DNA from: Heterodontus francisci
Lineage: Eukaryota
NCBI RefSeq assembly: GCF_036365525.1
Contig: NC_090413.1
Location: forward strand, 28,844,262-28,908,261
Reading direction: 5' to 3'
DNA length: 64,000 bases
Made by a program: the position numbers and the translations under genes. Shown in pieces: positions 783 to 63,534 of this stretch. Every line of letters starts with the position of its first letter. Within the stretch, counting starts at the first letter, position 1. A model generated the notes under the pieces. That model had not been told where the DNA came from, searched no databases, and saw nothing but the letters and a program-made list of their open reading frames with translations.

Positions 783-1374
783 TATGTTTTTCTTTTTTTC
801 CATCACAATATCGTTTCAGACAAAATAGGATCATTTCTCCCCAGAGTATTTCTCCATGAGTGTTGGACAATTACATCAGTCTTTCTGCAGTATTCATGAG
901 CTAGATGTTCTCTTTTCATTCTTCACAACTGTTACTCTGTTGAACATGCTATTTTAGCATTCTTCATCTCCCATTTAATAGATCCTATTAATATCCCTCA
1001 TGTTACAACAGCCCAGTACGGCTCAGCTTCCAATTGCTCCTCGCTTGTCCCTGTGGAAGTGTCTGGCCTTCAATTAGCATCTCACCCAATGGTCTGGTCA
1101 GGACATGTACCTTGCTATATGGGGTCCCAGGACACACGTTCACGTGATTGCAATCTGTGGTCAGTAATGGACAGTGTCCCCACACAGCCCCGTCCTGTGT
1201 TCTGCATTCTGATCAACCTCAGAGACAAAAATGCCACTGGAAAGCAGGATAAATGCGATGAGACCAATTCTGTTTTTTTCAGGACTAAGAGAAGGGTCAG
1301 TATGAGTTTCATTGGTCTCCATTCGAAATTAAAAAACCTCACTAACTATTTGTAACCAAAATGATGCAACTTAC

Positions 1375-1656
1375 ACAGGACGTGGAGGGTGTCAACCTGT
1401 TTTTTAACACGGCTTGTTGACGGATCTTGAAGTTTCAGTTCAGCCTCGCAGATGTACTGCTGTCCATCCAGCTTTGCTTCTGCATCCACAGTATAGTAGA
1501 TACTGAGCCCAGTACGGCTTGATTCATTCACTAATATGTCATTTCTGTTCTTCAGACTGAGTTGAAGTTCCCCTGAGACATTAAACACACTGCAGGTAAT
1601 ATTAACTGGGTTTCCTTCAGGGCTGATTGGTACTTGGATTTCAGGGTCAGGAAAAA
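1375..1656 (-). CDS. Gene A (ICAM-like) Ig domain 4 exon
   Basis: cag|TT...CTG T|gtaagt, 282 nt, phase 1-1; VFPDPEIQVPISPEGNPVNITCSVF...LDGQQYICEAELKL...LHVL, like ICAM D4. Confidence 0.9.
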
Positions 1657-2297
1657 CTGTAAAAATAATAGAGAAAAGTTGTTAGAAACACTCCCAAGCT
1701 TATCTTGCAGCTGCTCAGTGTGAAAATTCATCCTGGAGACTTGATCTGTTGTGCTGTTTTATCATTGATCCATATTACATGCCTGTGCCACACAGACACA
1801 TCCAGCTACTCCACTAAGGCTGGGTAGAGAACTTTAATCACTTTCAATCAATGACCATCTGATACATGATTTTGTAAGTGGAACCGGATTTTTAAAAAAA
1901 TCTGAGATCATACCCTATCTTCACGAAATGTACTCACTCATCACTGAGCACAACTCATTTATCTCATTACATGATTGTTCCTTTGTCAAGATGAGACATA
2001 ATATTGTGTTTACAATCCAAATCCAGTCACTTGTTTCAACACTCGCTTTTAATCAGGGAATATCGAGTGTGACTAACACTTTCTCATGATCTTGGAATAC
2101 CAAGTGTCACTAAGACATCTTAAGCTGCTTCTCTTTGAGTATCTGTGAATATGCAAATATTTGAATAAACTTCCTAACTTGTCACTCAACGGAAGGGATT
2201 TTATTGTTTAAAGTAAACCTGACATGCTGCAATTTTGACTATCATGAACTATCAGAACGCTATCTAATCATAATGCCTCCACAACCAGAATCCTTAC

Positions 2298-2591
2298 CAA
2301 ACACCTCAATGAAGACGCTATCATTCTTTGGTGGAACTGATGGATATTCCTCAAAATCTGCTGTACAGACGACTTCCATCAGACCAGCCACCTGTGGTTT
2401 CCATGTCGTTGTTGTTCGGACAGTATTAGAATTTGGCCTTGTTGTAACTGAATTCAGTTCTTTACCATCCTGAAACCACCTGACTCTCATCTTCTCAGCA
2501 GGATAGACATTTGGGACCTCACATGTTAACGTGGCCTCTTGCTTCATTTCTATGGGCCTCTTGTCAAGGATTCGAGGTGGATCCAGAAAAG
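2298..2591 (-). CDS. Gene A Ig domain 3 exon
   Basis: ttgcag|CT...TTT G|gtaagg, 294 nt; TLTCEVPNVYPAEKMRVRW...VVCTADF, a VCAM-D2/D5-like I2/C2-set domain. Confidence 0.9.
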
Positions 2592-3781
2592 CTGCAACAC
2601 AGACAAGGAATTCACTTCATTTTGATTTGCTGTGCTGTGATTCAGTTGCTATTGGACAGAGTGGAAAACTGACCAGTACTGGTATTCCCCAATACACACA
2701 TCCCAGGAGTCTATCACACTGTTCACTGAGAGAAAACTGGAGCCATCATCAGGAGATCACATACTTTATTTTTTTAATTAATTCTTCCTACTCTTCAGGC
2801 AGCCCTAGTATCTAAATCTGCTACTTTTGTGCCAGCCACTATGAGTGGTACAGTCTGATGCATTCACTGATTAACCTTTATTGTGATCTTTACTTGTATC
2901 TGCTACAACATCCCAGTTGAGGCTCAGACCTCAGTGTGGGTGACTCTGGGTGTAAATCTTTCAAGCTTTTTTGCTGCTCCTGCATGGAGAGATTGACTGA
3001 TCTGCTCCTTGACCATCACCTCTACTGACCACTATGAGGTGTGCAAAGCTGTCACATGAGTTTCCTTCAGACATTCCCGTCACTATTAGGAAGCATCTGG
3101 CTGCCATCTGGCAAAAGCAGGAGAGTGATAATATCAACATGTGGGCCATCCTGGAGATAAACATACTTTGCACCAATTTGTTTGTTGCAGAAGAGTAATC
3201 AAGCACAGGGAAAAGCCATTTGGCCCAGAAAGCTCATTTTACTAATGGCTTATCTCTGCGAGCCTAGTATTCAAGCATTGCCTGAAAGATTATTGAGTAA
3301 AAGATACCTACTATTATCTTCTTATTCGATTAATATTGACTTATCTATAGCATTTAATATTTTATACACCTTCCTGAGAGTGTCCTTTAGCCTTCCTCTT
3401 GCTACACTGCAGAGCTCATCTTCATACCAGGAATCAGGTTAGGGTCCTTGGATGTCTTTTTGGAGTCAAGTTAATAAGATCTTAGGCTGGTAGAAGAGGT
3501 CCTGCAAAATCTTTCTTGACCCATTCAAACTAAGCTTTGCGCACACCCTAGCTGGCTAAAAGATTTGCAGTAATTTACCGCTACACTTTGGGCAATTGAG
3601 AAAACTGCATATTTGAGGTGGGTCCAAGATGAACAATTCTTATCCAACACATTTTGTGGTATGGATAAAACAGGAGCTAATGAGATCATCACTGCATTGC
3701 TTCCCACTGTTTATTCTCTACAAATTATCGATATTTAACCATTCTCAAAAAGAGAACATTTCTTGTTCAAGTGGAACTTAC

Positions 3782-4096
3782 AGTAAGTTTGCAGAGTCAC
3801 AGAGGAGTTTGTGATTGGTTTTGTGGTGTTTGAGCCCAAGTCCACCTCTGCCAAGCAGGTGTACTCCTGTCCATCATCTGACATACTTGCAGTGAAATTG
3901 AAGATGTTCCTCAGTCTTTTATCTTCATCCGGGAAACCTTCTTCTCCTGTGAAATTCCTCTGAACAATCTCACTCCCTCTCAGCCATGTGAGTTTGAGTT
4001 TATTGTTTGGATAGACCCTCGGACCAATACACTCCAGACTATATGTCTTGTTAACTTCCAGCACTTCAGGAGGTGATGTAATGTTTAACTCTCGAT
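3782..4096 (-). CDS. Gene A Ig domain 2 exon
   Basis: ttaacag|AT...TAC T|gtaagt, 315 nt; LECIGPRVYPNNKLKLTWLRG...DDGQEYTCLAEVDL...TLQTY resembles ICAM D2 (LLRG...HGANFSCRTELDL...QLQTF). Confidence 0.92.
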
Positions 4097-4496
4097 CTGT
4101 TAAAGGAGAATCAGTTAACATAATTCACTGAAATAATGTATCTGGGCACCCTCTGCTCCATCACACATGCATCTGAGTGAATATGTGCAACATGACTTTA
4201 TCCCAACCACAAATACCATGTTCAATCTCCCCCATTAGCAATAACTACACAAAGTTGTATTTTCAGGCAAGAAGTTTTCCTAAAGTGGAATACTGAAACA
4301 ATTGGCATCTACATAGAATCTGATCCCCAACTGAACACACCTTGAATTAAAATAAACTGACAAAGCTATATTTGTTCCAAATACTGAACTGAATGCATGC
4401 AAATTATAAGCTGAAGCTTAATTATTGCATTGTTTAAACATTTAAAATAGTCTAACTGTAAATTAACTAGTCATTTGGTAGTACAGAACTTGAGTA

Positions 4497-5075
4497 TTGC
4501 TGAGAATAGAGATATTTTGTCGAAGCTTTTCGTCTTGCACTCATCAGGACAAATCACAGGAATACCAATGTAAGGGAAGCAACAAATTTATACTGTATGA
4601 GAAGAGAGTGCTGATTGGTTGGGAAGTGGACTCTGATTGGTAGAGGCGTTGCCATGGAGAATGCACCAGTTTATGGTGACAGATAACTACCAAGCTTTGT
4701 TTGAAATTTCAACCAGGCAGCTTGACTCTGATTGGTCAAAGCATTGCCCTATGGAATGAACCAGCAAATGGCTGTCACTTATTTTGTTCAGGTGAAACAG
4801 GCACAATGTGTGTACATGTTCTTTCTGTCTGCAAAGAACAGGGCCCTGTGTATTAATATATGTAGCTTCCAGTTTGCACAAATGCACCCACACTGCGAGC
4901 CCAACTGACAATCTTAAATTGGTTAAAAGCATAATTCTTAGCACACCGAGGATTATTTAGCAAATGTTGTCCAATCGCGGAATCACAGCTAATGTTGGAC
5001 ACTGTGTTTTGAGTTTTGCAAGCACAGGCTGGTCGGGTACAGCCTGTACCTTGCCCGTTGCAAACAGCGGAAGGG
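4497..5075 (-). mobile_element. Penelope-like element 3' remnant (GIY-YIG endonuclease C-terminus plus terminal repeat)
   Basis: Minus-strand translation CDSAIGQHLLNNPRCAKNYAFNQFKIVSWARS, frameshift, HLCKLEATYINTQGPVLCRQKE; typical PLE endonuclease tail, followed by a hammerhead motif. Confidence 0.75.
4516..4553 (-). ncRNA. Minimal type I hammerhead ribozyme
   Basis: Minus strand reads UUUGUC-CUGAUGA-GU(GCAAG)AC-GAA-A(AGCU)U-C-GACAAA: intact core, 6-bp stem I, 2-bp stem II, palindromic AAGCUU stem III. Confidence 0.8.
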
Positions 5076-5082
5076 ATATCGA

Positions 5083-5153
5083 GTCATAGAGAGATACAGC
5101 ACCGAAACAGGCCCTTCGGCCCACCCAGTCCGCCATGACCATCAACCACCCAT
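5083..5153 (-). mobile_element. HE1-like SINE 3' tail fragment
   Basis: Matches the tails of the fuller copies at 26603-26947 and 57380-57735. Confidence 0.7.
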
Positions 5154-5159
5154 GTTTTT

Positions 5160-7245
5160 TGATCCACGCTGACTATCCCTGATTAATCCGTGCCTTTCTA
5201 AGTGACAGTTTATCCTATCTCTCAGAATTGATTCTAATAATTTGCCCACCACTGAGGTCAAACTGACCAGCCTATAATTATTTGGCCTATCCTTCACACA
5301 CTTTTCAAACAATGGTGCAACGTTCGTAGACTGTCTGTATCTAGTGAGGATTTGAAAATGATTCTCAGAGCATCCACAATTTTCTCCCTGGTTTCCTTTA
5401 ACAGCCTGGGATAAAATCTATCCGGCCCTGGTGAGTTATTCACTTTCAAGGACGTCAGACCCTCTAGTACTTCCTCGCTCATTATGCTTATCGTATCTAA
5501 TATTTCACACTTCTCCTCTTTGACTCCAATGTCTGCATCATCCCTCTCCTTTGTGGAGACAAAGTACTCATTAAGAACCCTGCCCACATCTTCTGCATCC
5601 ATGCATAAGTTGCCTTGTACATCTCCGATAGGCCCTACCCTTTCCCTAGTTATCCTCTTAATGTACTGATAAAATATCTTTGGGGTTTCCTTGATTTTGC
5701 CTGCCAATATTTCTTCATGTCCTCTCTTTGCTTTCCTAATTTCTTTTTTTACTTCATCTCTGCAATTTCTATACTTCTTTAAGCTTTCTAAAGTATTAAG
5801 TTTTTTTGTCATAAGTTTTCTGTTTCTGCTTTATCTTACCCTGTATGCTTCTAACTAACCAAGTGGCTCTAGATTTGGCTGTATCACCCTTTTTCTTTGT
5901 GGGGACATGTCGACACTGTGCCTGCAAAATCTTGCTTTTGAATGCCTCCCACTGGTTTGCCACTGATTTTCCTTCAAGTAGCTGTATCCAATCTACTTTC
6001 GGCAGGTCACCTCTCAGCTTCGTAAAATTTGCCTTCCCTCAATTTAGAACTTTTATCTTTGTCCATTTCCATAACAATGCTAAATCTAACTGTATTATTG
6101 TCACTGTCTCCAAAATAGTCTCCCACTGCCACTTCATCCACTTGCCCAGCTTCATTTCCTGAACTGGAGTAGCCATATAAATACCGTGGCTACAAGAACA
6201 GGTCAGAGGCTGTGAATTCTGCGGAGGAACTCATCTCCTGACTCCCCAAAGCCTGTCCACCATCTACAAGGCACAGTCAGGAGTGTGATGGAATACTGTC
6301 CACTTGCCTGAATTGGTGCAGCTCCAATAACTCTCAAGAAGCTCGACACCATCCAAGACAAAGCAGCCTGCTTGATTGGCATCCCATCCAGCACTTTCAA
6401 CATTCATTCCCTCAGTGGCAGCAGTGTGTACCATCTACAAGATGCACTGCAGCAAAGCACCAAGGCTCCTTAGGCAGCACCTTCCAAACCCGCGACCTCT
6501 TCCAACTCAAAGGACAAGGGCAGCAAATGTATGGGAATACCACCACCTGCAAGTTCCTCTCCAAGTCACACACCATTCTGACTTGGAACTATATTGCTGT
6601 TCCTTCACTGTCGCTGGGTCAAAATCCTGGAACTCCCTTCCTAACAGCACTGTGGGTCTACCTACCCCACATGGACTGTAGCGGTTCAAGAATGCAGCTC
6701 ATGACCACCTTCTCAAGGACAATTAGGGATGGGCAATCAATGGTGGCCTAGCCACCGACACCCACATCCCATGATTGAATTAAAAAAAACTAAATCTAGA
6801 ATTGCACTCCCTCTTGTTGGGCTTCTTACATGCTGGCTAAAAAAGTTCTCTTGAATGCAGTTCAAGAATTTTGTGTCCTCTGTGCCCTTCACATTGTTTG
6901 TAACCCAGTCGATATTAGGGTAGTTGAAATCCACAACTACTATTGCCCTATTGTTTTTGCACTCAGAAATCTGCCTACATATTTGTCCTTCTCTCTCCCT
7001 TTCATTATTTGGGGGTCTATAGTACACACTAGTCGTGTGGTTGCCCCTTTTTTTATTTCTGAGCTCAACCCATATGGCCTCATTTGATGATTCATTTAGC
7101 ATATCATCCCTCCTCACAGTTGTAATGAATTCTTTAACCAATAATGCTACACCCACTCCTTTTTTATCCCCCTCTCTATCCTACCTGAAAACTCTATATC
7201 CAGGGATGTTGAGCTGCCATTTTTGCCCCTCTTTAAGCCAAGACT
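5160..7245 (-). mobile_element. CR1 LINE ORF2 fragment (endonuclease to pre-RT), interrupted by a family-B LINE at ~6163-6790 (+)
   Basis: GVALLVKE...YYRPPN...DFNYPNIDW...PTRGSAILDLV; KVNNSPGPDRFYPRLLKE. Confidence 0.88.
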
Positions 7246-7357
7246 TTCATTCCTCATTAAACGATGGCTCCATTAGTGGTAGGAGTAGAATTTCAGCACA
7301 ATCTAATTGGTTTTCTGTAACTCAGTTATGCTGGGCACTGAACCCTGGATATGTGTT

Positions 7358-7997
7358 TTTTTAAATTCATTCATGGGATGTGGGCGTCGCTGGCCAGGCC
7401 ACCATTTATTGCCCATCCCTAATTGCCCTTGAGTAGGTGGTGGTGCGCTGCCTTCTTGAACCGCTGCAGTCCATGTGGGGTAGGTACACCCACAGTGCTG
7501 TTAGGAAGGGAGTTCCAGGATTTTGACCCAGCGGCAGTGAAGGAACGGTGATATAGTTCCAAGTCAGGATGGTGTGTGACTTGGAGGGAAACTTGCAGGT
7601 GGTGGTGTTCCCATGCATTTGCTGCCCTTGTCCTTCTAGGTGGTACAGGTTGCGGGTTTGGAAGGTGCTGTCTAAGGAGCCTTGGTGCTTTGCTGCGGTG
7701 CATCTTGTAGATGGTACACACTGCTGCCACTGTGCAATGGTGGTGGAGGGAGTGAATGTTTGTAGATGGGGTGCCAATCATGTGGACTGCTTTGTCCTGG
7801 ATGGTGTCGAGCTTCTTGAGTATTGTTGGAGATGCACCCATCCAGGCAAGTGGAGAGTATTCCATCACACTCCTGACTTGTGCCTTGTAGATGGTGGACA
7901 GGCTTTGGGGAGTCAGGAAGTGGGTTACTCGCCGCAGGATTCCTAGTCTCTGACCTGCTCTTGTAGCCACGGTATTCATATGGCTACTCCAGTTCAT
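7358..7997 (-). mobile_element. Family-B LINE 3' fragment
   Basis: ORF 7419-7997 NWSSHMNTVATRAGQRLGILRR...HHHLLKGN plus tail. Confidence 0.88.
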
Positions 7998-8039
7998 GTA
8001 ATCCCATGTCCTGAATCCAGGTAACTAGAGTTATCATCT

Positions 8040-11000
8040 AAAGCAGAGCTTTAAAAAGCGTGCCAAGAACTCAAAGACCAGTGTGAGAGAGTGCGAGAGT
8101 GTGCGAGAGAGAGAGAGACAGAGAAAAAAAAACACAGCGGGGGCAGAGCTTTAAAAAGCACGCCAAGAACTGAGACCAGAGAAAGAGAAAAATGCAGTGG
8201 GAGCAGAGACGGGGTGGGGGGGGGGGGCGGGGGGGGGGGTGAAAACTGAAAATTGACATCAGAGCGACGTCACATTCAACAGTGAGGGCAAGGAAACAGA
8301 AAATAGCTGGGGTCAGTATTCTGGTAAGGTTTTAATTTAAATTGAAATCAAATATAGAGTAAGACTTGATCGATTTATTAGTATATAAACTAAAAACTAA
8401 AGCGGATTAAAAAACTAAAGACCAGGCGGAAATTTTAAAAACAAATTAAAATCTAATTAAATAAAATAGAGATGCAGGGCCAGGTGATGTGTTGTACCTG
8501 CATGATGTGGGAGTTGGTGGACCCCATTGTGGTTCCTAGTGACGACATCTGTAGCAAGTGTTGGCTGCTCAAGGAACTCCGCCTCAGAGTTGATGAGCTG
8601 GAGTCTGAGCTTCGGACACTGCGACACATCAGGGAGGGGGAAACATTGTGTTTCAGGAGACATTCACACCCCTTAGATTAACTACCTTGAATTCGGCCAG
8701 TGGTCAAGGACAGGAGGATGTGACTATGAGTGAGACAGGTAGAGGGATCCAGGAGATAGTGTTGCAAGAGCCTCAGCCCTTGTCTAACAGGTTCGAGATT
8801 CTTGCTCCCTGTGTGGACAAGAGCAGGGACTGTAGGGAGGATGAGCAAACTGACCAGAGAGGGAGCCATTCAAGTGGGGGGAGAAAAGAGAAATGTAGTT
8901 GTAATCGGGGTTAGTATAGTTAGGGACATAGACACTGTTCTCTGTGGCCAAAATCGAGAGTCCCGAAGGCTGTGTTGCCTACCTGGTGCCAGGGTTCAGG
9001 ATGTGTCATCTGGGCTGCAGAGGAACTTGGAGTGGGAGAGGAAAGATCCAGTTTTCATGGTCCACATAAGTACCAATGATATAGGTAGAACGAGGATAGA
9101 GGTTCTGCTGAGGGAATATGAGCAGCTAGGGGCTAAATTAAAAAGCAGAACCAAAAAGGTAATAAGCTCCGGATTACTACCCGAGCCACGAGCTGATTGG
9201 CATAGGGTCAATAAGATTAAAGAGGTAAATGCGTGGCTCAAAGATTGGTGTGGGAGAAATGGGTTCGAATTCATGGGACTTTGGCACCAGTACTGGGGAA
9301 GGAGCAAGCTGTTCTGATGGGATGGGCTCCACCTGAATCATGCTGGGACTAGAGTCCTGGTGAATTGCATAACTTGGGCTGTAGATAGGGCTTTAAACTA
9401 AATAGTGGGGGGGGGGAGGGTTCAGTTGCATGGAAAAACAGGAAGTTAAAATTAAAGGAGAAGGTAGGAGTGCAGGTTAGTGATGAGGCTGATTGTTACC
9501 AGAAAATGAAAGGAAGGGACAGAACGTGTGAACATCATATTGCACCAAGGAATTGTACAAGAGTAGGGACATTTGATAATACAACAAAGTTAAAGGCTTT
9601 GTATCTGAATGCACGAAGCATTCGGAATAAAATAAATGAGTTAACAGTGCAAATAGACACGACTGGGTATGATTTAGTGGCGATTACTGAGACGTGGTTG
9701 CAGGGAAACCGGGTTTAGGAATTGAATATCCAAGGGTACTCAGTATTTCGGAAGGATAGGCAGGAGGAAAAGGAGGGGGTGTAGCTTTGTTAGTAAAAGG
9801 AAGAGATCAGTGCTGTAGTGAGAAATGATACAGGCACTGGAGATCAAGACGTAGAATCAGCTTGGGTAGAAATAAGAAATAGCAAAGGAAAGAGGTTCCT
9901 AGTGGGAGTAATCTGTAGGTCCCCAAACAGTAGTTCCGCAGTGGGGCACAGTATAAACCAGGAAATACTGGGGGCTTATAAGAAAGGTACGGCAATAATC
10001 ATAGGTGATTTTAATATGCATATAGACTGGATTAATCAAATTGGCAAGGGTGGCCTTGAGGGAGAGTTCATTGAATGTATTAGAGATTATTTTTTGGAGC
10101 AATATGTTGTGGAACTAACTAGGGAGCAGACTATTCTAGATTTGATATTGTGTAATGAGGTGGGATTAATTACTGATCTCATAGTTAAGGATCCTTTACG
10201 GACGAGTGATCATAGCATGCTAGAATTTCAAATTCAGTTTGAGGGCGAGAAACTGGAGTCCCACATTAGCATTATGGAGTAAAACAAAGGTAATTACATA
10301 GGCATGAGGACAGATTTGGGCCTTGTGGACTGAGCAGAAAAACTAAAAGGTAGGACAGTTGATGAGCAGTGGCAGATGTTTAAGGAGATATTCAATTCCT
10401 CCCAACTAAAATATATCCAGAGAGGAAGAAGGATTGTAAGAGAGGGAAAAAACACCCATGGCAAGGAAGTTAAGGATAACAAAGACAAAAACTAAGGCAT
10501 ACCATATTGCAAAGGCCAGTGGCAGGCTGAAAACATAACAAAAAGGGCAAAGGTAAATTATGAAAGAAAACTCGTGCAAAATATAACAACGGATAGCAAA
10601 AGCTTCTGTAAGTATATAAAAGGGAAGAGAGTAGCTAAAGTGAATGTTGGTCCCTTGGAGGATGAGACTGGGGAGTTAATAGAGAGGAACACAGAAATGG
10701 CGGAGGCACGAAATCAGAATTTTGCCTCTGTTTGTCCGATGGAGGACCCGAGTACCATCCCAATAGTAACAGTTAATGCAGAGGTTATAGAAAGGGATGA
10801 ACTTAGAAAAATCATCATCACTAGGGAAAAAGTACTGAGCAAACTATTGGGATTGAAGGCAGACAAGTCCCAAGGGCCTGATGGCTGCATCCTAGGGTGT
10901 TAAAAGAAGTGGCAGCAGAGATAGTGGATCCATTGGGTATAATATTCCAAAATTCCCTGGATGCGGGAAAGGTTCCAGTGGATTGGAAAAATGCTAATAT

Positions 11001-12435: not shown

Positions 12436-12549
12436 AAGTCCGAGAGCATTAAATCAGCAATACATTTGACAATTACTTTCAGCAATGTGAAAGGACTTAC
12501 CTAGGGCTGCTTGTGGCAAACCAGCCATCTTGAAGTTCAAGACACGCAA

Positions 12550-14950: not shown

Positions 14951-14954
14951 TACT

Positions 14955-19145: not shown

Positions 19146-19146
19146 T

Positions 19147-48769: not shown

Positions 48770-48946
48770 CAATCAATGACCATCAGGTACGTGATATTGT
48801 CAGTGGAAAAGGATTAAAAAATCTGAGATCATACTCTATCCTCACCAGATATATTCACTCCTCATCACTGAACACAACTCATTTATCGCATTCCATGGTT
48901 ATTTCTTTGTCAAGATGAGACATATTATTGTGTTTACAGTCCAAAC

Positions 48947-53974: not shown

Positions 53975-54990
53975 ACTGTGGCAACTCACCAAGGCTTCTT
54001 AAACAGTGCCACGACCTCTACCACCGGGAAGGACGAGGGCAGTAGGTGCATGGGAACACCACCACCTGCAAGTTCCCCTCCAAGTCGCACACCATCCTGA
54101 CTTGGAACTATATCACCGCTCCTTCGTAATTGCTGGAACTGTCAAAATGCTGGCCCTCCCTCCCTAACAGCAATGTGGGAGTGCCTCCACCACACAAAAT
54201 ACAATGATTCAAGAAGGCGACTCAGCACCACCACCTCCTACCCTATGTCACCTGCTCCTGAGATCCCCAACATCACATATGCTAGTTTTCAGCCATTTTG
54301 ATTCAATCCATATGATATTAAGAAATGGCTGAAGGCACTGGATACTGCAAAGGCTATGAGTCCTGACAACATTCCGGCTGTAATACTGAAGACTTGTGCT
54401 GCAGAACGAGCCGTGGCCCCAGCCAAAGTGTTCCAGTACTGCTACAACATTGACATCTCCACAACAATTTGGAAAATTGCCCAGGTATTGTCCACAGAAA
54501 GCAGGACAAATCCAATCCGGCCAATTACTGCCCCATCAGTCTACTCTCAATGAGCAGTAAAGTGATACAAGCTGTATTTGACAACGCGAGAGAGTGGCAC
54601 TTACTCACCAATAACCTGCTCAGTTTGGATTCTGCCGGGACTGTTCATCTCCAAACCTCATTATAACCTTTATCCAAACGTGGGCAAAAGAGCCAAATTC
54701 TAGAGGTGAGTTGAGAGTGACTGCTCTTGACATCAAGGCAGCATTTGACCATGTTTGCCATTAAGGAGCCCTCTTAATATTGAAGTTAATGGGAATTGGG
54801 GGAATATTCTCCACCAGCTGGAGTCATACCTTACATACGAACATACGAACTAGGAGCAGGAGTAGGCCACTCGGCCCCTCGAGCCAGCTCCAGTATTCAA
54901 CAAGATCACGGCTGACCTGATTGCAGAAAGGAAGATGGTTGTGGTTGTTGGAGACCTATTATCTCAGCCCCAGGACATCACTGCAGGAAT
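53975..54990 (+). mobile_element. Rearranged family-B LINE fragments
   Basis: 3' end fragment followed by an RT-upstream region (KAMSPDNIPAVILKTCA, DKSNPANYCPISLLS). Confidence 0.75.
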
Positions 54991-55189
54991 TAAAAGCTAG
55001 TCTAATGCCGTCCTTACCTGGTCTGGCCTACATGTGATTCCAGACCCACAGCAATGTGTTTGATTCTTAAAATGCCCTCTGAAATGGCCTAGCAAGCCAC
55101 TCAGTTCAAGGGCAATTAGGGATGGGCAATAAATGCTGGCTTAGCCAGTGACACCCACATCCCACAAACGAATAAAAAAAAGCCATACC

Positions 55190-57930
55190 GTTCAACAAAC
55201 TCTTTAAACTCTGTGGAGGTGAATTAAGTTCCATTATCATCTATCACCCTTTCCAGGATCCCTTGTTCAACAAACAGGACTCGTACTACTGTGGTGATTG
55301 TTGCATTTCTCAAATCTTTTACCTCGCTGATTTATGAATAGTAATCTCCTACTATAAGGTACCATTCTTAGTTGTGCGTGAATAAGTCAGCTCCCAGTAT
55401 ACCATGTTCTGGGAAGTATCTCACTAGCCATCATCTCTTTTTTGAGCTGGGTATTTCTATACATCTGGCACACATGCATGTAGATACCATTTTTCAATGT
55501 CCTTGTAGATGCCTATCTGACTCTAAGCTTACACTTCTCCATTCCCATGCGGCCTTCATGTGTCTTCTGGAGAAGTTCTCTCTGCATTGTTTTGGGTAGA
55601 ATGATTCTGGATCCAGCCATCTGAACACTGTCTTCTAGTGAGATGTCATCTCTGATTAACCAATACTGCTGTATTCCTGGATGTGTTTGATGCATCTTAT
55701 CTGGCCATCCCTGAATCACTTGCTAAGAGAGCATCTTAACTCTTCATCTTTACTGGTCTCATCTCTGTTTGACTCAATTTTGGTGATGTCACATTCACTA
55801 GGTGTGATGTATCTTTATACCTAGATCTTTTCCCTTGTGTTTCTCACGTGGCAACAGACGAGATAGATATTTACCAGCACCATTTATCTTCCTGGCTTGT
55901 ATTTCAGGATGAAATCATAACTCTGAAGCCTCGAGAACACCTTTGTAGTCTTGCTGATACTCCCACACAGACTTTTCTTGCAGATACGTTTTAGTGGACG
56001 ATGATCACTCCCCACTATGAATCTTTTTTCGTAGGGTTATGTATGAAATTTCTTGCATCCTCAGATCACTGCCAAAAGCTCTCTTTCTATGCTAACATAT
56101 CTGATGCTATCAGCTTTGGATGCTATCAGCTTTCCTTCTTGTACCAGGGCTGCTCCCTTTCCTTTTGTAGAAGCATCTACTTGCAGAGTGATGGGTTTGC
56201 TGTGTTGTCGTGTGACCAACTTGTCTCCTTGGATATTACTCCTTTGCGTTTACTGAAACTCCTCTCATGTGACTCTGACTATTGGTACTCAACATCTTTC
56301 ATCAGCTCTTGTAGGTTTGCTGTGTGCTCTGGCATGTGAGGGATGAAAGAGTTTATGTACTGGATCAAGGCAAGCAAACTCCTCAGCTCTCTCTTGTCTT
56401 GGAGCTTCCATCTCAGAGATAGTTGTGACTTTTTCAGGACTCAGCTTGACTCCATCAGGTGTGTACACCATTCCAAAGAACTGGCATTCTGTCACCTTTA
56501 CAATGCATTTGTTTGCTTGATCCCAGCTTTTCTGGTTCTCTCCATGGCTTCATGTAGGTGGTAGTTGTGGTCTTTCTCATCTACACCATCAACCGGGGTA
56601 TCATCAGGTATGCCGATTGCTCCTTTGCATCTCCTGTGTGTCTCATCTAATTTCTTCTGGAACACATCCTGGCTCACTTTAAGGCCAAAAGGTAGATGCA
56701 GGAATTTGTACCGTCCAAAGAGTGTGTTGAATGTTGTCAACACCGAAGGGTCCTCACCAGGCTTCACATTCCAGTAGCTGTTTCTGGCATCAAGCTTGCT
56801 GAAAACTTTTGCCCCTGCCAGTGCTGGTATGATCTCTTCCAGTGTTGGAGAAGAGTAGTGATTCCTCTATATTGCTTGATGAAGATCGTTGGGAGCCAGA
56901 CAAACTCGTAGCTATCCATTTGGCTTCTTTTTCACCATGATGGAATTTACCCAATCTGTCGGCTCTGTGACTCTGGCAATCACTTTATTTTTTTCCATCT
57001 CTGATGTTCTCTTTCAAGCTTTCCTTTTAGCTCTATTGGTAATTTACGTGGGGGTGAATCACTGGTTTCTTCTCTGGGTCAATGTGATGTGATACTCAAA
57101 GTCTTCAAAGCATCCAAGCGTCTCACCAAAACACTCTGGATGCAGTTGGACCAGATCTTCCTTGCTTCTGATCGGAGGGTGCTTTTCAATGGGTGTACTA
57201 CCTTCAACCTTCATTGATGCCTCCTTCATCTTACAGTTTACCAAGATCAGCTGCAGCTCTTGGCAACTGTTTAACCCCAGGATAGCTGAACCATCCGTTT
57301 CAGTGACGTAGAATATACAGTTACCGTATTTTCCTTTGTGCATCCCTCTGATTTGGGTCATTCCCAGGTTGAATCTCAGTTTTTAGTTTTAGTTTTAGAG
57401 ATACAGCACTGAAACAGGCCCTTCGGCCCACCGAGTCTGTGCCGACCCTCAACCACCCATTTATACTAATCCTACACTAATCCCATATTCCTACCACATC
57501 CCCACCTGTCCCTATATTTCCCTACCACCTACCTATACTAGGGGCAATTGCTAATGGCCAATTTACCTCTCAACCTGCAAGTCTTTGGCATGTGGGAGGA
57601 AACCGGAGCACCCGGAGAAAACCTACGCAGACACAGGGAGAACTTGCAAACTCCACATAGGTGGTACCCAGAATTGAACCCGGGTCGCTGGAGCTGTGAG
57701 GCTGCGGTGCTAACCACTGCGCCACTGTGCCGCCCATCATAGACTGTCAGCATGGTGTTTCTCGGTTTCAGAGCATCTTTATTTCGGTAACCATTCTCTT
57801 TCAAATTTTCAGGAAGCATCTTCTGGTAGAGTCTGAGCAGGGTAATGTTACTCAGTGTTCCAGGATCAAGGTTCAGCTTCAGGTTTATGTTTATGGGCTT
57901 ACCTCTCACCTTCTTCCTGATCCATAACAT
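55190..57930 (-). mobile_element. Decayed Gypsy/Ty3 pol (protease-RT-RNaseH-integrase N-terminus)
   Basis: TTFNTLFGRYKFLHLPFGLKVSQDVFQ (RT), IILPKTMQRELLQKTHEGRMGMEKCK (integrase Zn region), AILGLNSCQELQLI (protease). Confidence 0.85.
57380..57735 (-). mobile_element. Full-length HE1-like SINE
   Basis: tRNA-like head gggcggcacagtggcgcagtggttagc...gggttcaattct; (CTAAAA)n tail. Confidence 0.88.
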
Positions 57931-57934
57931 TCAC

Positions 57935-60900
57935 GGCACACAAGTGCCAGGAAATATCATCTCAAACAAGAGGGAATCTAACCATCTCCCCTTGATGCTC
58001 AATGGCATTACCATCACTGAATCCCCCACTGTCAACATCCTGGGGGTTATCATTGACCAGAAACTGAACTGGACCAGCCACATAAATAATGTGGCTACAA
58101 GAGCATGTCAGAGGCTGGAAATTCTGCTGCGAGTAACTCACCACCTGTCTGCTCAATGCCTGTCATAGGAAGATAGGAACAGGAGTAGGCCATTCAGCCC
58201 CTCAAGCCTGTCCCGCCATTCAATGAGATCATGGCTTATCCGCAGCCTTACTCCGTATCCCTGCCTTTTGCCCATATCCCTTAATATCTTTGCTTAACAA
58301 AAATCTATCTATCTCAGATTTAAAATTAACAACTTTTCGAGCTTCAACTGCTGTTTGTGGGAGAGAGTTCCAAACCTCTACCACCCTGTGCATGAAGAAG
58401 TGCTTCCTAACATCTCTCCTGAATGGTCTGGTCCTACTTTTTAGACTATGCCCCTGTCCACCATCTACAAGGCACAAGTCAGGAGTGTGATGGAATACTC
58501 TCCACTTGCCTGGATGGCTGCAGCTCCAATAACACTCAAGAAGCTCAACACAATCCAAGACAAAGCAGCCTGCTTGATTGGCACCCCATCCACCACCTTC
58601 AATATTCAGTCCCTTCAGCATCGACACACAGTGGCAACAGTGTGTACCATCTATAAGATGCACCAAGGCTTCTTCAGCAGGGCCTTCCAAACCTGTGACC
58701 TCCACCACCTAGAAGCACAAGGGCAACAGATGCACAGGAACACCACCACCTGCAAGTTCCCCTCCAAGACACGCAACATCCTGACTTGGAACAATATCGT
58801 CGTCACTGGCTCAAAATCCTGGAACTCCCTTCCTAACAGCAGTGTGGGTATACTTACACTCCAAGGACTAGAACAGTGCACTATATGGAGCCTCAAAAGA
58901 GCTGATCTACCAGCCTTTCATCTGTGTCCTTGAATTTACACTTTCTGGCTACGTTTCTCAATCTCATTAAGATATTGTTAATAGGCTTACCTAGTCATAG
59001 AGTCATTGAGTTATACAGTACAAAAACAGGCCCTTCCGCCCATCATGTCTGTGTCGGCAATCAAGCACCCAACTATTCTAATCCCATTTTCCAGCACTTG
59101 GCCCGTAGCCTTGTATGCTATGGCATTTCAAGTGCTCATCTAAATACTGTGTTGTGAGGGTTCCTGCCTCTACCACCTCTTCAGGCAGTGCGTTCCAGAT
59201 TCCAACCACCCTCTGGGTGAATTTCGTTTCCTCAAATCCCCTCTAAACCTCCTGCCCCTTACCTTAAATATATGCCCCCTTGTTATTGACCCCTCCGCTA
59301 AGGGAAAAGTTTCTTCTGATCTAACCTATCAATGCCCCTCATAATTTTGTATACCTCAGTCATGTCCCCCCTCAGCCTTCTCTGCTCTAAGGAAAACAAC
59401 CCTAGACTTTTTAGTCTGTCTTCATAGCTGAAATGCTCCAACCCAGGCAACATCATGGTTAATCTCCTCTACACCCTTTCCAGTGCAATCACATCCTTCC
59501 TATAGTGTGGTGCCCAGAACTGTACACAGTACTCCAGCTGTGGCCTAACTAGTGTTTTATACAGCTCCATCATAACCTCCCTGCTCTTATATTCTATGCC
59601 TTGGCTAATAAAAGCATGTATCCCATATGCCTTCCTAACACCTTATCTACCTAAGCTGCTGCCTTCAGTGATTTATGGACAAGTACACCAAGGTCCCTCT
59701 GACCCTCTGTACAACCATTGTATATTCCCTTGTCTTGTTAGTTCTCCCAAAATGCTCACACTTCTCAGGATTAAATTCCATTTGCCACTGCTCTGCCCAT
59801 CTTACCAGCCCATCTATATCGTCCTGGAGTCTAAGGCTTTCATCCTCAATATTTACGACACCACCAATTTTTGTGTCATCTGCGAACTTACTGATCATAC
59901 CTCCTATATTCACATCTAAATCATTAATGTTGTGGAACCTTGTTCCTGTCTCAGGCTCTGAAATTCATAACAGTGGATCCGATGGTTTGACTTTGGCTGA
60001 ACACAAGGGTGATAGGTAAATTGGCCATTATAAATTGTCACTAGTATAGGTAGGTGGTAGGGTGGTAGGGAAATATAGGGACGGTGGGGATGTTTGGTAG
60101 GAATATGGGATTAGTGTAGGATTAGTATAAATGGGTGGTTGATGTTCGGCACAGACTCGGTGGGCCGAAGGGCCTGTTTCAGTGCTGTATCTCTAATCTA
60201 ATCTAAAAACACAAAAAATAGAAGCAGAAGTAGACCATTTGGCCCATCGAGCCTGCTCCACCATTCAACATGATCATGGCTGACCTTGGGCTTTAACTCC
60301 ACTTTCTTGCCCGCTCCCCATATCCCTTGATTCCCTATGAGACCAAAAACCTATCTATTCCAGCCTTAAATGCGCTGTAATGTTCTAATGTTCTAATAAA
60401 TGGAATAGTGTAGGTCAGATGGTCGGCGCAACATCGAGGGCCGAAGGGCCTGTACTGCGCTGTAATGTTCTAAATGTATTCAACAAAAATGAAGCATCCA
60501 CAACCGTCCAGGGTAGGGAATTCCAAAGATTCACAACCCTTTGAGTGAAGTAATTTCTCCTCATCTCAGTCCTGAATGATTGGCCCCTTATCCTGAGACT
60601 GTGCCCCCACATTCTAGATTCCCCAACCAGCAGAAACAATCTCTCAGCTTCTACCTTATCAAGCCCTTTCAGAAACCTGTATATCTCAATTCGATCGCCT
60701 CTCATTCTTCTAAACCCCAGAGAATATTGGTCCAGTTTAATCAGCCTCTTATCATAGGACAACCCCCTCATCCCAGGGACCAATTCAGTAAATCTTCGCT
60801 GCACCACCTCCTGTGCAAGCATATCCTTTCTTAAATGTGGAGACCAAAACTGCACACAGTATTCCATGTGCAGTCTCACCAAAGCCCTGTACAATTTTAG

Positions 60901-62810
60901 TAAGACTTCTTTCTTCCTGTACTCCAATCCCCTTGCAATAAAGGCCAACATGCATTTGTCTTCCAAATAGCCTGCTGCACCTGCATGTTAACTTTGTGTG
61001 TTCCTTGTACGAGTACCCCCAAGTCTCGCTGAACATCAACACTTACCAGTTTCACACCTTTAAAAACTAAAAACAGAGAACAGTACAGCACAGGAACAGG
61101 CCATTCGGCCCTCCAAGCCTGCACCAATCTTGATGCCTGCCGAAACTAAAACCTTCTGCATTTCCAGGACCGTGTCCCTCTATTCCCTTCCTATTCATGT
61201 ATTTGTCAAGATGCCTCTTAAACGTCGCTATCGTACCTGCTTCCACCACCTCCCCCGACAGCAAGTTCCAGGCACTCACCACCCTCTGTGTAAAGAACTT
61301 GCCTTGCACATCCCCTCTAAACTTTGCCCCTCGCACCTTAAACCTATGTCCCCTAGTAACTGACTCTTCCACCCTGGGAAAAAGCTTCTGACTATCCACT
61401 CTGTCCATGCCGCTCATAACTTTGTAAACCTCTATCATGTCGCCCCTCCACCTCCGTCGTTCCAGTGAAAACAATCCGAGTTTATCCAACCTCTCCTCAT
61501 AGCTGATGCCCTCCAGACCAGGCAACATCCTGGTAAACCTCTTCTGTACCCTCTCCAAAGCCTCCACGTCCTTCTGGTAGTGTGGCGACCAGAACTGCAC
61601 ACAATATTCTAAGTGTGGCCTAACTAAGGTTCTGTACAGCTGCAGCATAACTTGTCAATTTTTATACTCTATGCCCCGACCGATGAAGGCAAGCATGCTG
61701 TATGCCTTCTTGACTACCTTATCCACCTGCGTTGCCACTTTCAGTGACCTGTGGACCTGTACGCCCAGATCTCTCTGCCTGTCAATACTCCTAAGGGTTC
61801 TGCCATTTACTGTATACTTCCCACCCGCACTAGATCTTCCAAAATGCATTACGTCACACTTGTCTGGATTAAACTCCATCTGCCATTTCTCCACCCAAAT
61901 CTCCAACCGATCTATATCCTGCTGTATCCTCTGACAATCCTCATCACTATCCGCAACTCCATGAACCTTTGTGTCGTCCGCAAACTTACTAATCAGACCA
62001 GCTACATTTTCCTCCAAATCATTTATATATACTGCAAACAGCAAAGGTCCCAGCACTGGTCCCTGCAAAACACCACAAGTCACAGCCCTCCATTCAGAAA
62101 AGTACCCATCCACTGCTACCCTCTGCCTATGACAGAGCCAGTTCTGTATCAATCTTGCCAGCTCATCTCTGATCCTGTGTGACTTCACCTTTTGTACCAG
62201 TCTGACATGAGGTTTCTTGTCAAAGGCTTTACTGAAGTCCATACAGACAACATCCACTGCCCTTCCTTCGTCAATCATCTTCGTCACTTCCTCAAAAAAC
62301 TCAATCAAGTTAGTGAGACACGACCTCCCCTTCACAAAACATGCTGCCTCTCGCTAATAAGTTCATTTGTTTCCAAATGGGAGTAAATCCTGTCCCGAAG
62401 AATCCTCTCTAATAATTTCCCCACCACTGACGGAAGCCTATAATTTCCTGGATTATCCTTGCTACCCTTCTTAAACAAAGGAACAACATTGGCTATTCTG
62501 CGGTCCTCTGGGACCTCACCTGTAGCCAATGAGGATACAAAGATTTCTGTCAGGCCCCAGCAATTTCTTCCCTTGCCTCCCTCAGTATTCTGGGGTAGAT
62601 CCCATCAGGCACTGGGGACTTATCCACCTGAATGCTTTGCAAGACACCCAACACCTCCTCCTTTTTCATAACGACATGACCGAGACTATCTACACTCCCT
62701 TCCCTACACTGTCCTGCTTCTCTATTTTTATGACCAAAGTGAACAACTTCACACTTCCCTACATTATACTCTATTTGCCATCTTGTTGCCCACTCACTTA
62801 ACCTGTCTAT
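57935..62810. mobile_element. Stack of CR1 fragments (58165-58450, 58995-59925, 60215-61060, 61075-62810; all -), family-B LINE pieces and an HE1 3' part (~60005-60210 +)
   Basis: RT motifs (MDFSKAFDK, KFADDTK, RPHLEYCVQFWSP) and several independent 3' tails. Confidence 0.88.
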
Positions 62811-63258
62811 GTACTGAAGATATGTGCTGAATTTCTCAAAAATCTTGTCCCAGTTTTTACTACCATTCTCATTCATTTCCCAGCTATTGAAAAGATCTTA
62901 TCCTTTCTCCCCTGTCCACAGAAGGCTGTAGCTGACCTTTTCCTCTTTCTGGGGCCTTTCAGAAAACTACTGAATGTCAATTTGCACTTTTACTTAAACT
63001 TTTCGAATGCTTCCACAACGTCATTGGCCTCCCATTTGAACACAGGCTGGAACTGTGTGTTCATTGCTGTGGCAGCGGCTGACTTGTTTTACACACGATT
63101 TACACTTTTGTTTTCTGGTACTACCCGTTTCCCACCAGTGCAGTTCAGTACCTCACCTAATACACTGCAGTACTATTCATAGTCTAAAATATTTCACACT
63201 GCCTTCCACCCTACTTAAGATTCTGCAATCAACTGTTAGAACAAGAGTTTTCACTTAC

Positions 63259-63534
63259 TGTATACTGTGACCACCTTTTTCTCCTCCTTCAGCTGACGAC
63301 CGTCTGATTTACAGATTACACTGCATGGTGCTGCAAAATCCCATTTCTGCACACTCGGGAAATAATCTGTGGACCAGTTAGTGCCATTTCTTCTGTTTGG
63401 ATGTATCCCTGATTTATATTCCACTGTCATTATCGGTTCTGCACATGTTGTACTGCAGTTCACCTCTAAAGAGTCTCCAAATTCCACAGCTGAGGGGTTT
63501 GTGTCAATCCAAACCTCAAATCCAGTTACACTTG
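63259..63534 (-). CDS. Gene B Ig domain 1 exon (ICAM-type)
   Basis: ctgacag|CA...A|gtaagt, 276 nt; FEVWIDTNPSAVEFGDSLEVNCSTTCAEPIMTVEY...CSVICKSDGRQ...VTVY, close to human ICAM-2 D1 as recalled (FEVHV...AVEPKGSLEVNCSTTCNQP...LE). Confidence 0.93.

What the first reader, a model, noticed from the sequence alone, without database searches (positions are those of the whole stretch)
1270..63534. Tandem ICAM-like pair with divergent ligand-binding D1 on a homogenised D2-D4 stalk
Seen (manual count): D1 of A and B share 56 of ~92 aa (~60%, plus a 2-aa indel), whereas D2 differs at 3/105, D3 at 1/98 and D4 at 3/94 residues. Near-identity ends abruptly at the D2 splice acceptor (~4104 / ~53417); D1-flanking introns are only faintly alignable. 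Known: ICAM D1 binds beta2-integrin I domains and is a pathogen docking site, ICAM-1 cis-dimerises via D4, and in paired receptors such as Siglec-5/14 conversion homogenises the ligand-binding end, the reverse of this pattern. Inference: an old duplication kept as a 'variable tip, constant stalk' system, possibly allowing A/B cis-heterodimers with two specificities.
Basis: partly seen in the sequence, partly recalled or inferred. Interest (0 to 1): 0.85.

Follow-up and report, generated by a model that had tools for sequence, protein, structure and literature searches.

The report
Ancient tips on homogenised ICAM stalks
Two neighbouring horn-shark ICAM-like adhesion-receptor genes have ligand-binding first domains that diverged long ago, while the rest of each gene is kept almost identical by repeated copying between gene copies, and five other shark species show the same pattern.

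Summary
A and B are minus-strand genes that exactly encode Heterodontus francisci XP_067877414 and XP_067877403. D1 is 56/93 identical with a 2-aa indel; D2 is 101/104, D3 96/97 and D4 90/93.

The identity comes from conversion, not constraint or an assembly artefact:
- Intron inside three tracts diverges as little as the exons (K 0.011 vs 0.012).
- Intron between the tracts has K 0.145, and D1 has dS 0.84 (omega 0.30).

A's D1 falls in a clade with five other galeomorph sharks (support 93/60) that shares a 2-aa insertion. D2-D4 cluster strictly by species, and a by-paralog tree is rejected (p-AU 5e-105).

- This is not a pair. The array has at least five six-Ig genes, and four carry the B-type D1.
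- The homogenised block runs through D5-D6 and stops before two unlike TM/cytoplasmic tails.
- In sharks, D2 is also homogenised with an ancient 3-Ig paralog.
- D1 shows no overall positive selection, and the integrin-binding Glu is kept.
- Cis-heterodimers are untested.

The scan had already noted this family on neighbouring DNA of the same genome. I rate it a new example of a known kind of evolution, of moderate to high interest.

The parts
25895..25963 (-). Gene A exon 1: ATG and signal peptide
   Evidence: tblastn of the first 23 residues of XP_067877414 (P0099): 22/23 identical, the last being a split codon
19848..20129 (-). Gene A D1 exon (A-type ICAM_N domain, with the 2-aa insertion A54-D55)
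   Evidence: AG/GT borders, phase 1. Pfam ICAM_N 30.8 bits against a cutoff of 21. Exact substring of P0099.
4097..19847 (-). Gene A intron 1 (15.8 kb, rich in LINE/SINE copies). No colinear homology with B's intron 1 beyond 4175.
   Evidence: Sensitive blastn finds only dispersed repeat families. Alignment.
4097..4175 (.). 5' edge of the homogenised block in A (equals B 53410-53454). Identity decays with indels and is then lost.
   Evidence: DNA contig 4075-4493 bridges it with 0 differences at single-copy depth.
3782..4096 (-). Gene A D2 exon
   Evidence: Splice 3782|2591 seen in RNA contigs.
2298..2591 (-). Gene A D3 exon
   Evidence: Both splices seen in RNA contigs.
1375..1656 (-). Gene A D4 exon. 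The rest of gene A lies before the window start.
   Evidence: RNA contig 1513-1635 has no differences and carries A's own letter at 1516.
3747..4104 (.). Conversion tract 1 (equals B 53060-53417): D2 exon plus short flanks, 96-100% identical per 100 columns
2073..3324 (.). Conversion tract 2 (equals B 50256-51506): 0.73 kb of intron 2, the D3 exon and 0.22 kb of intron 3. Includes a 317-nt perfect run.
   Evidence: A single 1251-nt DNA unitig with exactly these ends has about 3x the depth of the unique flanks.
1290..1789 (.). Conversion tract 3 (equals B 47151-47650): D4 exon plus flanks
63259..63534 (-). Gene B D1 exon (B-type ICAM_N domain). B's leader exon lies beyond the window end.
53410..63258 (-). 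Gene B intron 1 (9.8 kb, repeat-rich)
53095..53409 (-). Gene B D2 exon
50479..50772 (-). Gene B D3 exon
47236..47517 (-). Gene B D4 exon
44466..44711 (-). Gene B D5 exon (I-set Ig)
   Evidence: Its protein sequence is also present unchanged in gene A's product.
43796..44077 (-). Gene B D6 exon (I-set Ig)
39390..39577 (-). Gene B last coding exon: beta-type transmembrane segment, cytoplasmic tail and TGA stop
39084..39089 (-). AATAAA about 300 nt after B's stop codon. Sequence match only.
47711..50220 (.). B-only insertions in intron 3 (47711-48769 and 48946-50220) that separate tracts 2 and 3. Further B-only insertions lie at 46241-46750 and 51657-52903, and an A-only insertion at 424-781.
   Evidence: Gaps between colinear blastn blocks

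Best explanation
A and B are two members of a tandem array of at least five six-Ig, ICAM-like type I membrane receptors in the horn shark Heterodontus francisci.

Their first Ig domains (D1, the ICAM_N integrin-binding type) belong to two lineages, A-type and B-type. These separated before the galeomorph shark orders diverged. Everything from about 50-80 nt upstream of the D2 exon through D6 is kept nearly identical among the paralogs of each species by repeated interlocus exchange. The exchange takes two forms: short gene-conversion tracts laid over at least one older, larger homogenisation, which could be a conversion or an unequal crossover.

D1 escapes because its exon (29% nt divergence) and its 10-16 kb transposon-filled intron offer no homology for heteroduplex formation. 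The barrier therefore reinforces itself. Selection to keep two binding specificities may add to it.

Shown here: the gene structures, the three divergence layers, the species-wise clustering of stalks, and the cross-species A-type D1 signature.

Inferred: that A-type and B-type D1 bind different integrins or other partners through the conserved Glu63 face, and that selection rather than mere loss of homology keeps them apart.
For: Identity: all exon translations are exact substrings of XP_067877414 (A) and XP_067877403 (B).

Family:
- ICAM_N lies above Pfam's cutoff in both D1s.
- ICAM-3 and ICAM-2 D1 are the best solved relatives, with Glu aligned to Glu.
- ICAM-5 D1-D4 and ICAM-1 D1-D5 are colinear by sequence.
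- They are the only multi-Ig chains with TM about 0.6 to the predicted model.

Layers of divergence:
- D1 dS 0.84, dN 0.25.
- Intron between tracts K 0.145.
- Intron inside tracts K 0.011, equal to exons at 0.012.
- The tract structure exceeds all 20,000 shuffles.

Five paralogs:
- D2-D6 are 97-100% identical.
- Only A has the A-type D1.
- Tails come in two types.
- 14 of 21 informative site pairs fail the four-gamete test.

Across species:
- A-type versus B-type genes of one species have D1 36-62% identical but D2-D6 91-100% identical, in six species.
- Stalk tree: species clades at 99-100 support, and an A-type stalk clade is rejected with delta lnL 496, p-AU 5e-105.
- D1 tree: the A-type clade of six species has support 93/60, inner node 98/86.
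- The 2-aa insertion after CSTTC is present in all six A-type D1s and in none of 17 others.

Reads:
- RNA splices confirm the exons.
- A DNA contig crosses the breakpoint without a difference.
- Tract unitigs have depth about 32-37 against about 11-12 for the unique flanks.
Against: - Holding the three H. francisci six-Ig D1s together costs 19.7 lnL, but the AU test does not reject it (p 0.10). A's membership of the A-type lineage therefore rests on the tree plus the shared insertion, not on a decisive test.
- Other species were compared as annotated protein models only. Some of those models clearly merge tandem copies.
Donors, tract directions and the 3' boundary at DNA level are therefore unknown.
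- The D1-to-D2 splice of gene A was not seen directly; it is taken from the NCBI model.
- No GC enrichment is seen in the tracts.
- Nothing here tests binding.
Confidence: 0.8

Rival explanations
1. One recent chimeric event, with no ongoing conversion. A single unequal crossover or exon shuffle in intron 1 placed an old D1 exon in front of a young stalk copy, and nothing has been exchanged since.
For: A sharp single 5' edge lies just upstream of D2. The fairly even intron background of K 0.145 could date one such event.
Against: - Three nested tracts at K 0.011 inside that background need later exchanges.
- Site patterns among the five paralogs are mosaic.
- The same tip/stalk contrast recurs in six species, each with its own stalk, so exchange must have recurred in every lineage.
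Confidence: 0.08
2. One modular transcription unit. The array works as a single locus whose phase-1 cassettes (D1-D2 pairs, D6 repeats) are combined by read-through and alternative splicing. On this view stalk exons are shared or must stay interchangeable.
For: - All Ig exons are phase 1-1.
- NCBI models in S. torazame, H. perlo, M. asterias and H. francisci gene 4 string several D1-D2 cassettes or D6 repeats together.
- An earlier scan note raised the same idea.
Against: - In the window B ends in its own TM/cytoplasmic exon with a stop, and AATAAA follows about 300 nt later.
- A has its own ATG leader exon 13 kb downstream of that.
- Plain six-Ig models match each gene exactly.
- Multi-cassette models are what an automatic pipeline produces when it merges near-identical tandem genes.
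- It does not exclude conversion. It would only add a reason for it.
Confidence: 0.07
3. Assembly or polishing artefact. The D2-D4 identity arises from collapsed or cross-polished copies.
For: Perfect runs of up to 317 nt between copies 48 kb apart.
Against: - The copies differ by 285 of 3472 aligned columns and by kilobase insertions.
- Read-derived unitigs reproduce the tract ends at about threefold depth and cross the A breakpoint without a difference.
- Five annotated paralogs each have private substitutions.
- Independent assemblies of five other species show the same contrast.
Confidence: 0.02
4. Constraint only. The stalk is simply under very strong purifying selection while D1 evolves fast under positive selection after a recent duplication.
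For: D2 is the best conserved domain between shark species, at 80-90%.
Against: - Intron inside tracts is as similar as exon, K 0.011 vs 0.012.
- Stalk dS is 0.015 against D1 dS 0.84.
- D1 omega is 0.30.
- The few stalk differences are mostly nonsynonymous, 8 of 11.
- Between species the stalks differ by 15-35%.
Confidence: 0.02

Closest known systems
Mammalian ICAM family (ICAM-1, ICAM-5; also ICAM-2, ICAM-3)
   Same: - D1 is an ICAM_N domain with the C-x3-C...C-x3-C cysteines and a Glu at the end of strand C that aligns with the integrin-binding Glu of ICAM-2 and ICAM-3.
- D1-D4 are colinear with ICAM-5 and ICAM-1 by sequence and by predicted fold.
- It is a type I membrane protein with a short tail.
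   Different: - Six Ig domains, the last two being ordinary I-set domains.
- At least five tandem copies that evolve in concert, whereas mammalian ICAM paralogs differ in every domain (my own knowledge).
- No one-to-one orthology to any mammalian ICAM was established. NCBI's names vary between ICAM1/2/4/5-like and VCAM1-like.
Teleost classical MHC class I (U lineage)
   Same: Ancient membrane-distal (alpha 1) domain lineages are shared by distant species and recombined onto downstream sequence. The membrane-proximal alpha 3 domain is homogenised species by species (PMC4364491, read). This is the same polarity and the same kind of evidence as here.
   Different: A different protein family and function. 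There the shuffling is largely between alleles of one or a few loci. Here it is between tandem loci, and only two or three tip lineages are involved.
Siglec-5/Siglec-14 type paired receptors
   Different: There the ligand-binding end is homogenised and the signalling ends differ. Here the ligand-binding D1 is what stays apart. The two tail types carry no ITIM or ITAM motif and no charged transmembrane residue (inspection), so this is not an activating/inhibitory pair.
VCAM-1
   Same: A multi-Ig integrin ligand whose integrin-binding domain type occurs more than once through internal duplication (my own knowledge). Some automatic names call these genes VCAM1-like.
   Different: No VCAM-1 chain appears among the significant sequence matches to solved structures, while ICAM-5, ICAM-1 and ICAM-2 do. 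The duplication here is of whole genes.
Clustered protocadherins / UGT1A (variable first exons, shared constant exons)
   Same: A variable recognition end combined with a constant remainder (my own knowledge).
   Different: There the constant exons exist once and are shared by splicing. Here every D1 has its own physical copy of the stalk, and constancy is kept by DNA exchange.

Membership tests
ICAM family (ICAM_N-bearing Ig-superfamily integrin ligands) | N-terminal domain matches Pfam ICAM_N (PF03921) above the curated cutoff | tested here: met
   A 30.8 bits and B 31.1 bits against a cutoff of 21
ICAM family (ICAM_N-bearing Ig-superfamily integrin ligands) | Four-cysteine D1 pattern (C-x3-C ... 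C-x3-C) giving the extra disulfide | tested here: met
   NCSTTC ... PCSVMC in A and NCSTTC ... PCSVIC in B. C49, C53, C95 and C99 are invariant in 25 relatives.
ICAM family (ICAM_N-bearing Ig-superfamily integrin ligands) | Acidic residue at the end of strand C that coordinates the integrin metal ion | tested here: met
   Glu63 (in VEYK) aligns with the Glu of the ET motif (..LET..) in both ICAM-3 and ICAM-2. It follows predicted strand 59-61 and is at least 90% conserved. The metal-binding role is from my own knowledge of ICAM structures.
ICAM family (ICAM_N-bearing Ig-superfamily integrin ligands) | Ectodomain colinear with ICAM-1/ICAM-5 D1-D4 | tested here: met
   ICAM-5 4oi9: residues 37-416, E 1.6e-18. 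ICAM-1: 42-485, E 1e-11. Foldseek TM (target-normalised) 0.55-0.65 to ICAM-5 and ICAM-1, against 0.36 or less for all other chains listed.
ICAM family (ICAM_N-bearing Ig-superfamily integrin ligands) | Binds beta-2 integrin I domains | not testable with these tools
   Needs a binding assay
ICAM family (ICAM_N-bearing Ig-superfamily integrin ligands) | Orthology to a named mammalian ICAM | not tested
   Automatic names disagree. No tree with tetrapod ICAM, VCAM and MAdCAM was built.
Concerted evolution by interlocus gene conversion | Paralogs within a species are more alike than orthologs between species in the exchanged region | tested here: met
   Species clades at 99-100 support. The by-type tree is rejected at p-AU 5e-105. 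The same holds for D2, including the 3-Ig paralog, at p-AU 2e-45.
Concerted evolution by interlocus gene conversion | Non-coding sequence homogenised as much as coding sequence | tested here: met
   Intron in tracts K 0.011, exons 0.012, intron outside tracts 0.145
Concerted evolution by interlocus gene conversion | Discrete tracts beyond chance | tested here: met
   Longest run 317 nt against a maximum of 183 in 20,000 shuffles. The top-five sum was never reached.
Concerted evolution by interlocus gene conversion | Conflicting histories of neighbouring regions (D1 against the stalk) | tested here: met
   A-type D1 clade 93/60 and a shared 2-aa insertion against the species-wise stalks. Caveat: H. 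francisci D1 monophyly is not rejected (p 0.10).
Concerted evolution by interlocus gene conversion | Mosaic site patterns among paralogs (four-gamete test) | tested here: met
   14 of 21 informative amino-acid site pairs are incompatible
Concerted evolution by interlocus gene conversion | GC enrichment of converted tracts (biased conversion) | tested here: not met
   GC 0.395-0.399 in tract intron against 0.388-0.392 in background intron. This is an optional feature, not a defining one.
Paired activating/inhibitory receptors | Like ectodomains joined to an ITIM tail in one member and a charged transmembrane residue or ITAM adaptor site in the other | tested here: not met
   Neither tail type has (S/I/V/L)xYxx(I/V/L), and neither transmembrane segment has an internal charged residue (inspection of the alignment). 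The ectodomain tips differ instead of matching.

The most novel reading that the evidence does not exclude
The shark ICAM-like cluster is a selected modular system. Two or three D1 lineages with different integrin or pathogen specificities have been kept for over 200 million years. The stalk, and above all D2, is forced to stay identical among all members, even the ancient 3-Ig paralog. The reason would be that the receptors act as mixed cis-oligomers, or share one stalk-binding partner. On this view conversion is favoured by selection and is not just tolerated.
Probability: 0.18. Interest if true: 0.8.

Novelty: new member of a known kind. Interest (0 to 1): 0.6.

Why it matters
ICAM-type integrin ligands are central to leukocyte adhesion. 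Little is known of them outside tetrapods, and three literature searches found no study of the cartilaginous-fish genes.

The data show that sharks hold an expanded ICAM-like array. [quoted passage not shown]

This gives a clean natural experiment on how conversion and loss of homology partition a gene into a frozen part and a homogenised part. It also yields a concrete, testable prediction: A-type, B-type and 3-Ig-type D1 domains should differ in partner specificity while sharing the Glu-dependent binding mode.

A practical point follows. Automatic annotation of these arrays gives inconsistent names and merged multi-cassette models, so orthology calls for shark ICAM and VCAM genes should be made domain by domain.

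Tried and rejected
- Assembly artefact, pure constraint, and fast positive selection on D1 were each considered and rejected on the intron, synonymous and read data.
- An exon-centred bias of the tracts cannot be claimed. The tracts cover 61% of the aligned block, so three exons falling inside them is not remarkable.
- No GC-biased conversion signal was found.
The 3' part of gene A, the DNA of the other paralogs and the orthologous loci could therefore not be read. Comparisons with other species are at protein level only.
- A word-indexed search with A's D1 region found no further A-type genes among only 10 candidates. The lineage is documented in three galeomorph orders and was not found, which is not the same as shown absent, in squalomorph sharks and rays.
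- The window's exons were searched one by one by reference. Full-length comparisons used the database proteins that the tools returned.
- A bacterial promoter scan around A's leader exon is irrelevant to a shark gene and is disregarded.
- Rfam gave no hammerhead match at 4150-4900.


Full report
WHAT IS THERE

The window has no N and is 43% G+C. A self-comparison shows one long colinear duplication, A 308-4149 against B 45991-53459. It is broken by kilobase insertions in B, and dispersed LINE/SINE families fill the rest.

Stop-to-stop reading frames and splice signals give two minus-strand genes built of phase 1-1 Ig exons.
- Gene A: leader 25895-25963, D1 19848-20129, D2 3782-4096, D3 2298-2591, D4 1375-1656. 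The remainder lies before the window start.
- Gene B: D1 63259-63534, D2 53095-53409, D3 50479-50772, D4 47236-47517, D5 44466-44711, D6 43796-44077. Its last coding exon (39390-39577) holds a transmembrane segment, a 36-residue tail and a stop, and AATAAA follows at 39084-39089.

Every exon translation is an exact substring of an annotated Heterodontus francisci protein: A of XP_067877414 and B of XP_067877403. The window is therefore horn shark, and both genes already carry automatic names (ICAM 5-like).

THE OBSERVATION

It holds exactly.
- D1: 56 of 93 columns identical with one 2-aa indel.
- D2: 101/104.
- D3: 96/97.
- D4: 90/93.

The perfect run ends at 4104/53417, eight bases into intron 1. 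A gapped alignment persists to 4175/53454, and then homology is lost. Around D1 only 382 nt align, at 71%.

RNA contigs from the same animal and from a second, closely related organism cover only the three exons. They carry the joints 3782|2591 and 2298|1656, which the DNA run lacks.

CONVERSION, NOT CONSTRAINT OR ARTEFACT

Identity inside the block is mosaic. Three tracts (3747-4104, 2073-3324, 1290-1789) are 96-100% identical per 100 columns. The stretches between them are 76-91% identical.

Jukes-Cantor distances:
- exons 0.012
- intron inside tracts 0.011
- intron outside tracts 0.145

D1 has dS 0.84, dN 0.25 and omega 0.30, while D2-D4 have dS 0.015. That makes three age layers. Selection on protein cannot produce intron that is as similar as exon.

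The longest perfect run (317 nt, wholly intronic) exceeds every one of 20,000 shuffles, whose maximum was 183.

The read-derived contigs argue against an artefact.
- One 1251-nt DNA unitig has exactly the ends of tract 2, at depth 33.9.
- Unique flanks have depth 11-12.
- A 419-nt contig crosses the A breakpoint (4075-4493) without a single difference.
- The tool warns that contig depth is no copy number, so I use it only as consistent with several genomic copies sharing the tracts.

The tracts are partly bounded by copy-specific insertions.

NOT A PAIR

A profile-free search with A's D1 (collected), a full-length search and cluster look-ups show that the family is present throughout sharks, rays and a chimaera. 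The automatic names are inconsistent: ICAM1/2/3/4/5-like, VCAM1-like, hemicentin-like.

H. francisci has at least five six-Ig genes on one 31.9-Mb sequence. Their alignment shows:
- D2-D6 are 97-100% identical in all five.
- D1 is of B-type in four genes: three are identical and one has four changes.
- D1 is of A-type only in gene A.
- There are two unlike TM/cytoplasmic tail types: alpha in gene 1 and gene A, beta in B and genes 3 and 4. Tail type does not follow D1 type.

Between A and B the block therefore runs through D5 (81/81) and D6 (90/93), and it ends before the tail.

Among the 22 variable stalk positions, 7 are informative. Of the 21 pairs of informative sites, 14 show all four combinations. 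That is a mosaic, as expected from exchange among several copies.

D1 tree, 72 domains. There are three lineages:
- a 3-Ig-gene type (99/92);
- an A-type clade holding gene A with Scyliorhinus torazame, Mustelus asterias, Stegostoma tigrinum, Chiloscyllium punctatum and Hemiscyllium ocellatum (93/60, inner node 98/86);
- a large B-type group holding gene B.

All six A-type D1s share a two-residue insertion after the CSTTC motif. It is absent from all 17 other D1s aligned. Residues such as L59 and S92 are also type-specific.

The AU test does not reject holding the H. francisci D1s together (delta lnL 19.7, p 0.10). The placement therefore rests on the tree together with the insertion.

Stalk tree, D2-D4, 33 genes. 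Every shark species forms its own clade whatever the D1 type:
- H. francisci 100/100
- S. tigrinum 100/100
- C. punctatum 99/96
- H. ocellatum 100/98

Forcing the A-type stalks together costs 496 lnL (p-AU 5e-105). Within each of six species, A-type and B-type genes have D1 36-62% identical and D2-D6 91-100% identical.

In rays the stalks group by paralog across genera, so the process is weaker there.

AN EXTENSION OUTSIDE THE WINDOW

In sharks the D2 of the ancient 3-Ig paralog is 87-99% identical to the D2 of the same species' six-Ig genes. Its D1 (30-47%) and D6 (45-58%) are far apart. In rays the two D2 types are only 58-67% identical.

The D2 tree groups by species in five sharks and rejects a single 3-Ig D2 clade (p-AU 2e-45). 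Exchange is therefore exon-wise, and D2 is the most widely shared module.

WHAT THE PROTEIN IS

- Both D1s pass Pfam ICAM_N, and D3 passes the ICAM-1/3/5 D2 model.
- The best solved relatives of D1 are ICAM-3 and ICAM-2, with the query Glu on their Glu.
- The full protein is colinear with ICAM-5 D1-D4, ICAM-1 D1-D5 and ICAM-2. D5-D6 resemble generic I-set domains.
- An AlphaFold2 model from 25 relatives (mean pLDDT 82.5) matches ICAM-5 and ICAM-1 with target-normalised TM 0.55-0.65. No other listed chain exceeds 0.36.

In the model the A-specific insertion (A54-D55) lies in the loop between strands 45-51 and 59-61, just before Glu63.

The 37 A/B differences include:
- the three residues of that strand (L59I, I60M, M61T);
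- M98I in the next-to-last strand;
- six consecutive residues of the following loop;
- alternate residues N107, N109 and R111 of the last strand.

By my own knowledge of ICAM-integrin complexes, that sheet is the integrin-binding face. Hence my inference, at about 40% confidence, is that A-type and B-type D1 keep the Glu-dependent binding mode but differ in partner or affinity.

Gene A is transcribed. An RNA contig (1513-1635) matches it without a difference and carries G at 1516. That letter encodes the Arg found only in gene A among the five paralogs.

COMPARISON WITH WHAT IS KNOWN

Three literature searches found no paper on ICAM-like genes of cartilaginous fishes evolving in concert. One paper mentions Icam3 expression in nurse-shark myeloid cells. 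Another only dates ICAM1 and VCAM1 to fishes.

The closest precedent for the pattern is teleost MHC class I. There, ancient alpha 1 lineages are recombined onto downstream sequence and alpha 3 is homogenised by species (PMC4364491).

The tails carry no ITIM or ITAM motif and no charged transmembrane residue, so this is not an activating/inhibitory pair.

LIMITS

There is no DNA for the other paralogs, for A's 3' end or for other species.
- Only one read-laying run was allowed, so the D1-D2 junctions were not examined.
- Other species' proteins are automatic models, and several merge tandem genes.
- The window's exons were searched singly by reference.

VERDICT

This is a new, well-supported instance of domain-restricted concerted evolution in a family where it had not been described.

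Noticed in passing
window 4456-4700: A very high-copy repeat in A's intron 1. DNA unitig depth is 176,000-285,000, against about 11 for neighbouring unique sequence, and it is also abundant in the RNA runs of both organisms. Rfam gave no hammerhead match at E up to 1 in 4150-4900, only a chance-level snoRNA hit.
   Followed up: partly
outside the window: H. francisci XP_067877409 residues 25-306 and the 3-Ig genes of other sharks (P0039, P0019, P0070, P0006): In sharks the D2 exon of the ancient 3-Ig paralog is 87-99% identical to the six-Ig genes' D2 of the same species, although the flanking D1 and D6 are 30-58% identical. In rays the two D2 types are 58-67% identical. This is single-exon homogenisation across very old paralogs.
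   Followed up: yes
gene B 39390-39577 against the tails of XP_067877414 and XP_067877401: Two unlike TM/cytoplasmic tail types (alpha and beta, about 38% identical) are distributed among the five paralogs independently of D1 type. No alpha-type exon was found in the window downstream of B's D6.
   Followed up: partly
database proteins P0001, P0002, P0028, P0015, P0007, P0030, P0033: NCBI models of several sharks chain two to four D1-D2 cassettes or up to six D6 repeats in one protein. These are either merged tandem genes or real read-through transcripts. The question was not resolved here.
   Followed up: no
window 900-4700, runs X9 and X10 (organism B): RNA contigs of a second, closely related organism differ from both A and B at sites where A and B agree (1422, 1448, 2347, 4029). 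At the A/B-diagnostic sites 1516 and 2547 they carry B's letter, and at 3897 and 3914 they carry it in part of the contig depth. This fits species-wise homogenisation, with A's private letters being derived.
   Followed up: partly
window 5145-7180, 8457-12344, 12775-14077, 16663-19161, 23563-24969, 29687-30745, 56292-57382, 59668-62897: Many reverse-transcriptase and endonuclease-like open frames of LINE elements, on both strands, fill the long first introns and the intergenic region. They account for most of the dispersed repeat families.
   Followed up: no
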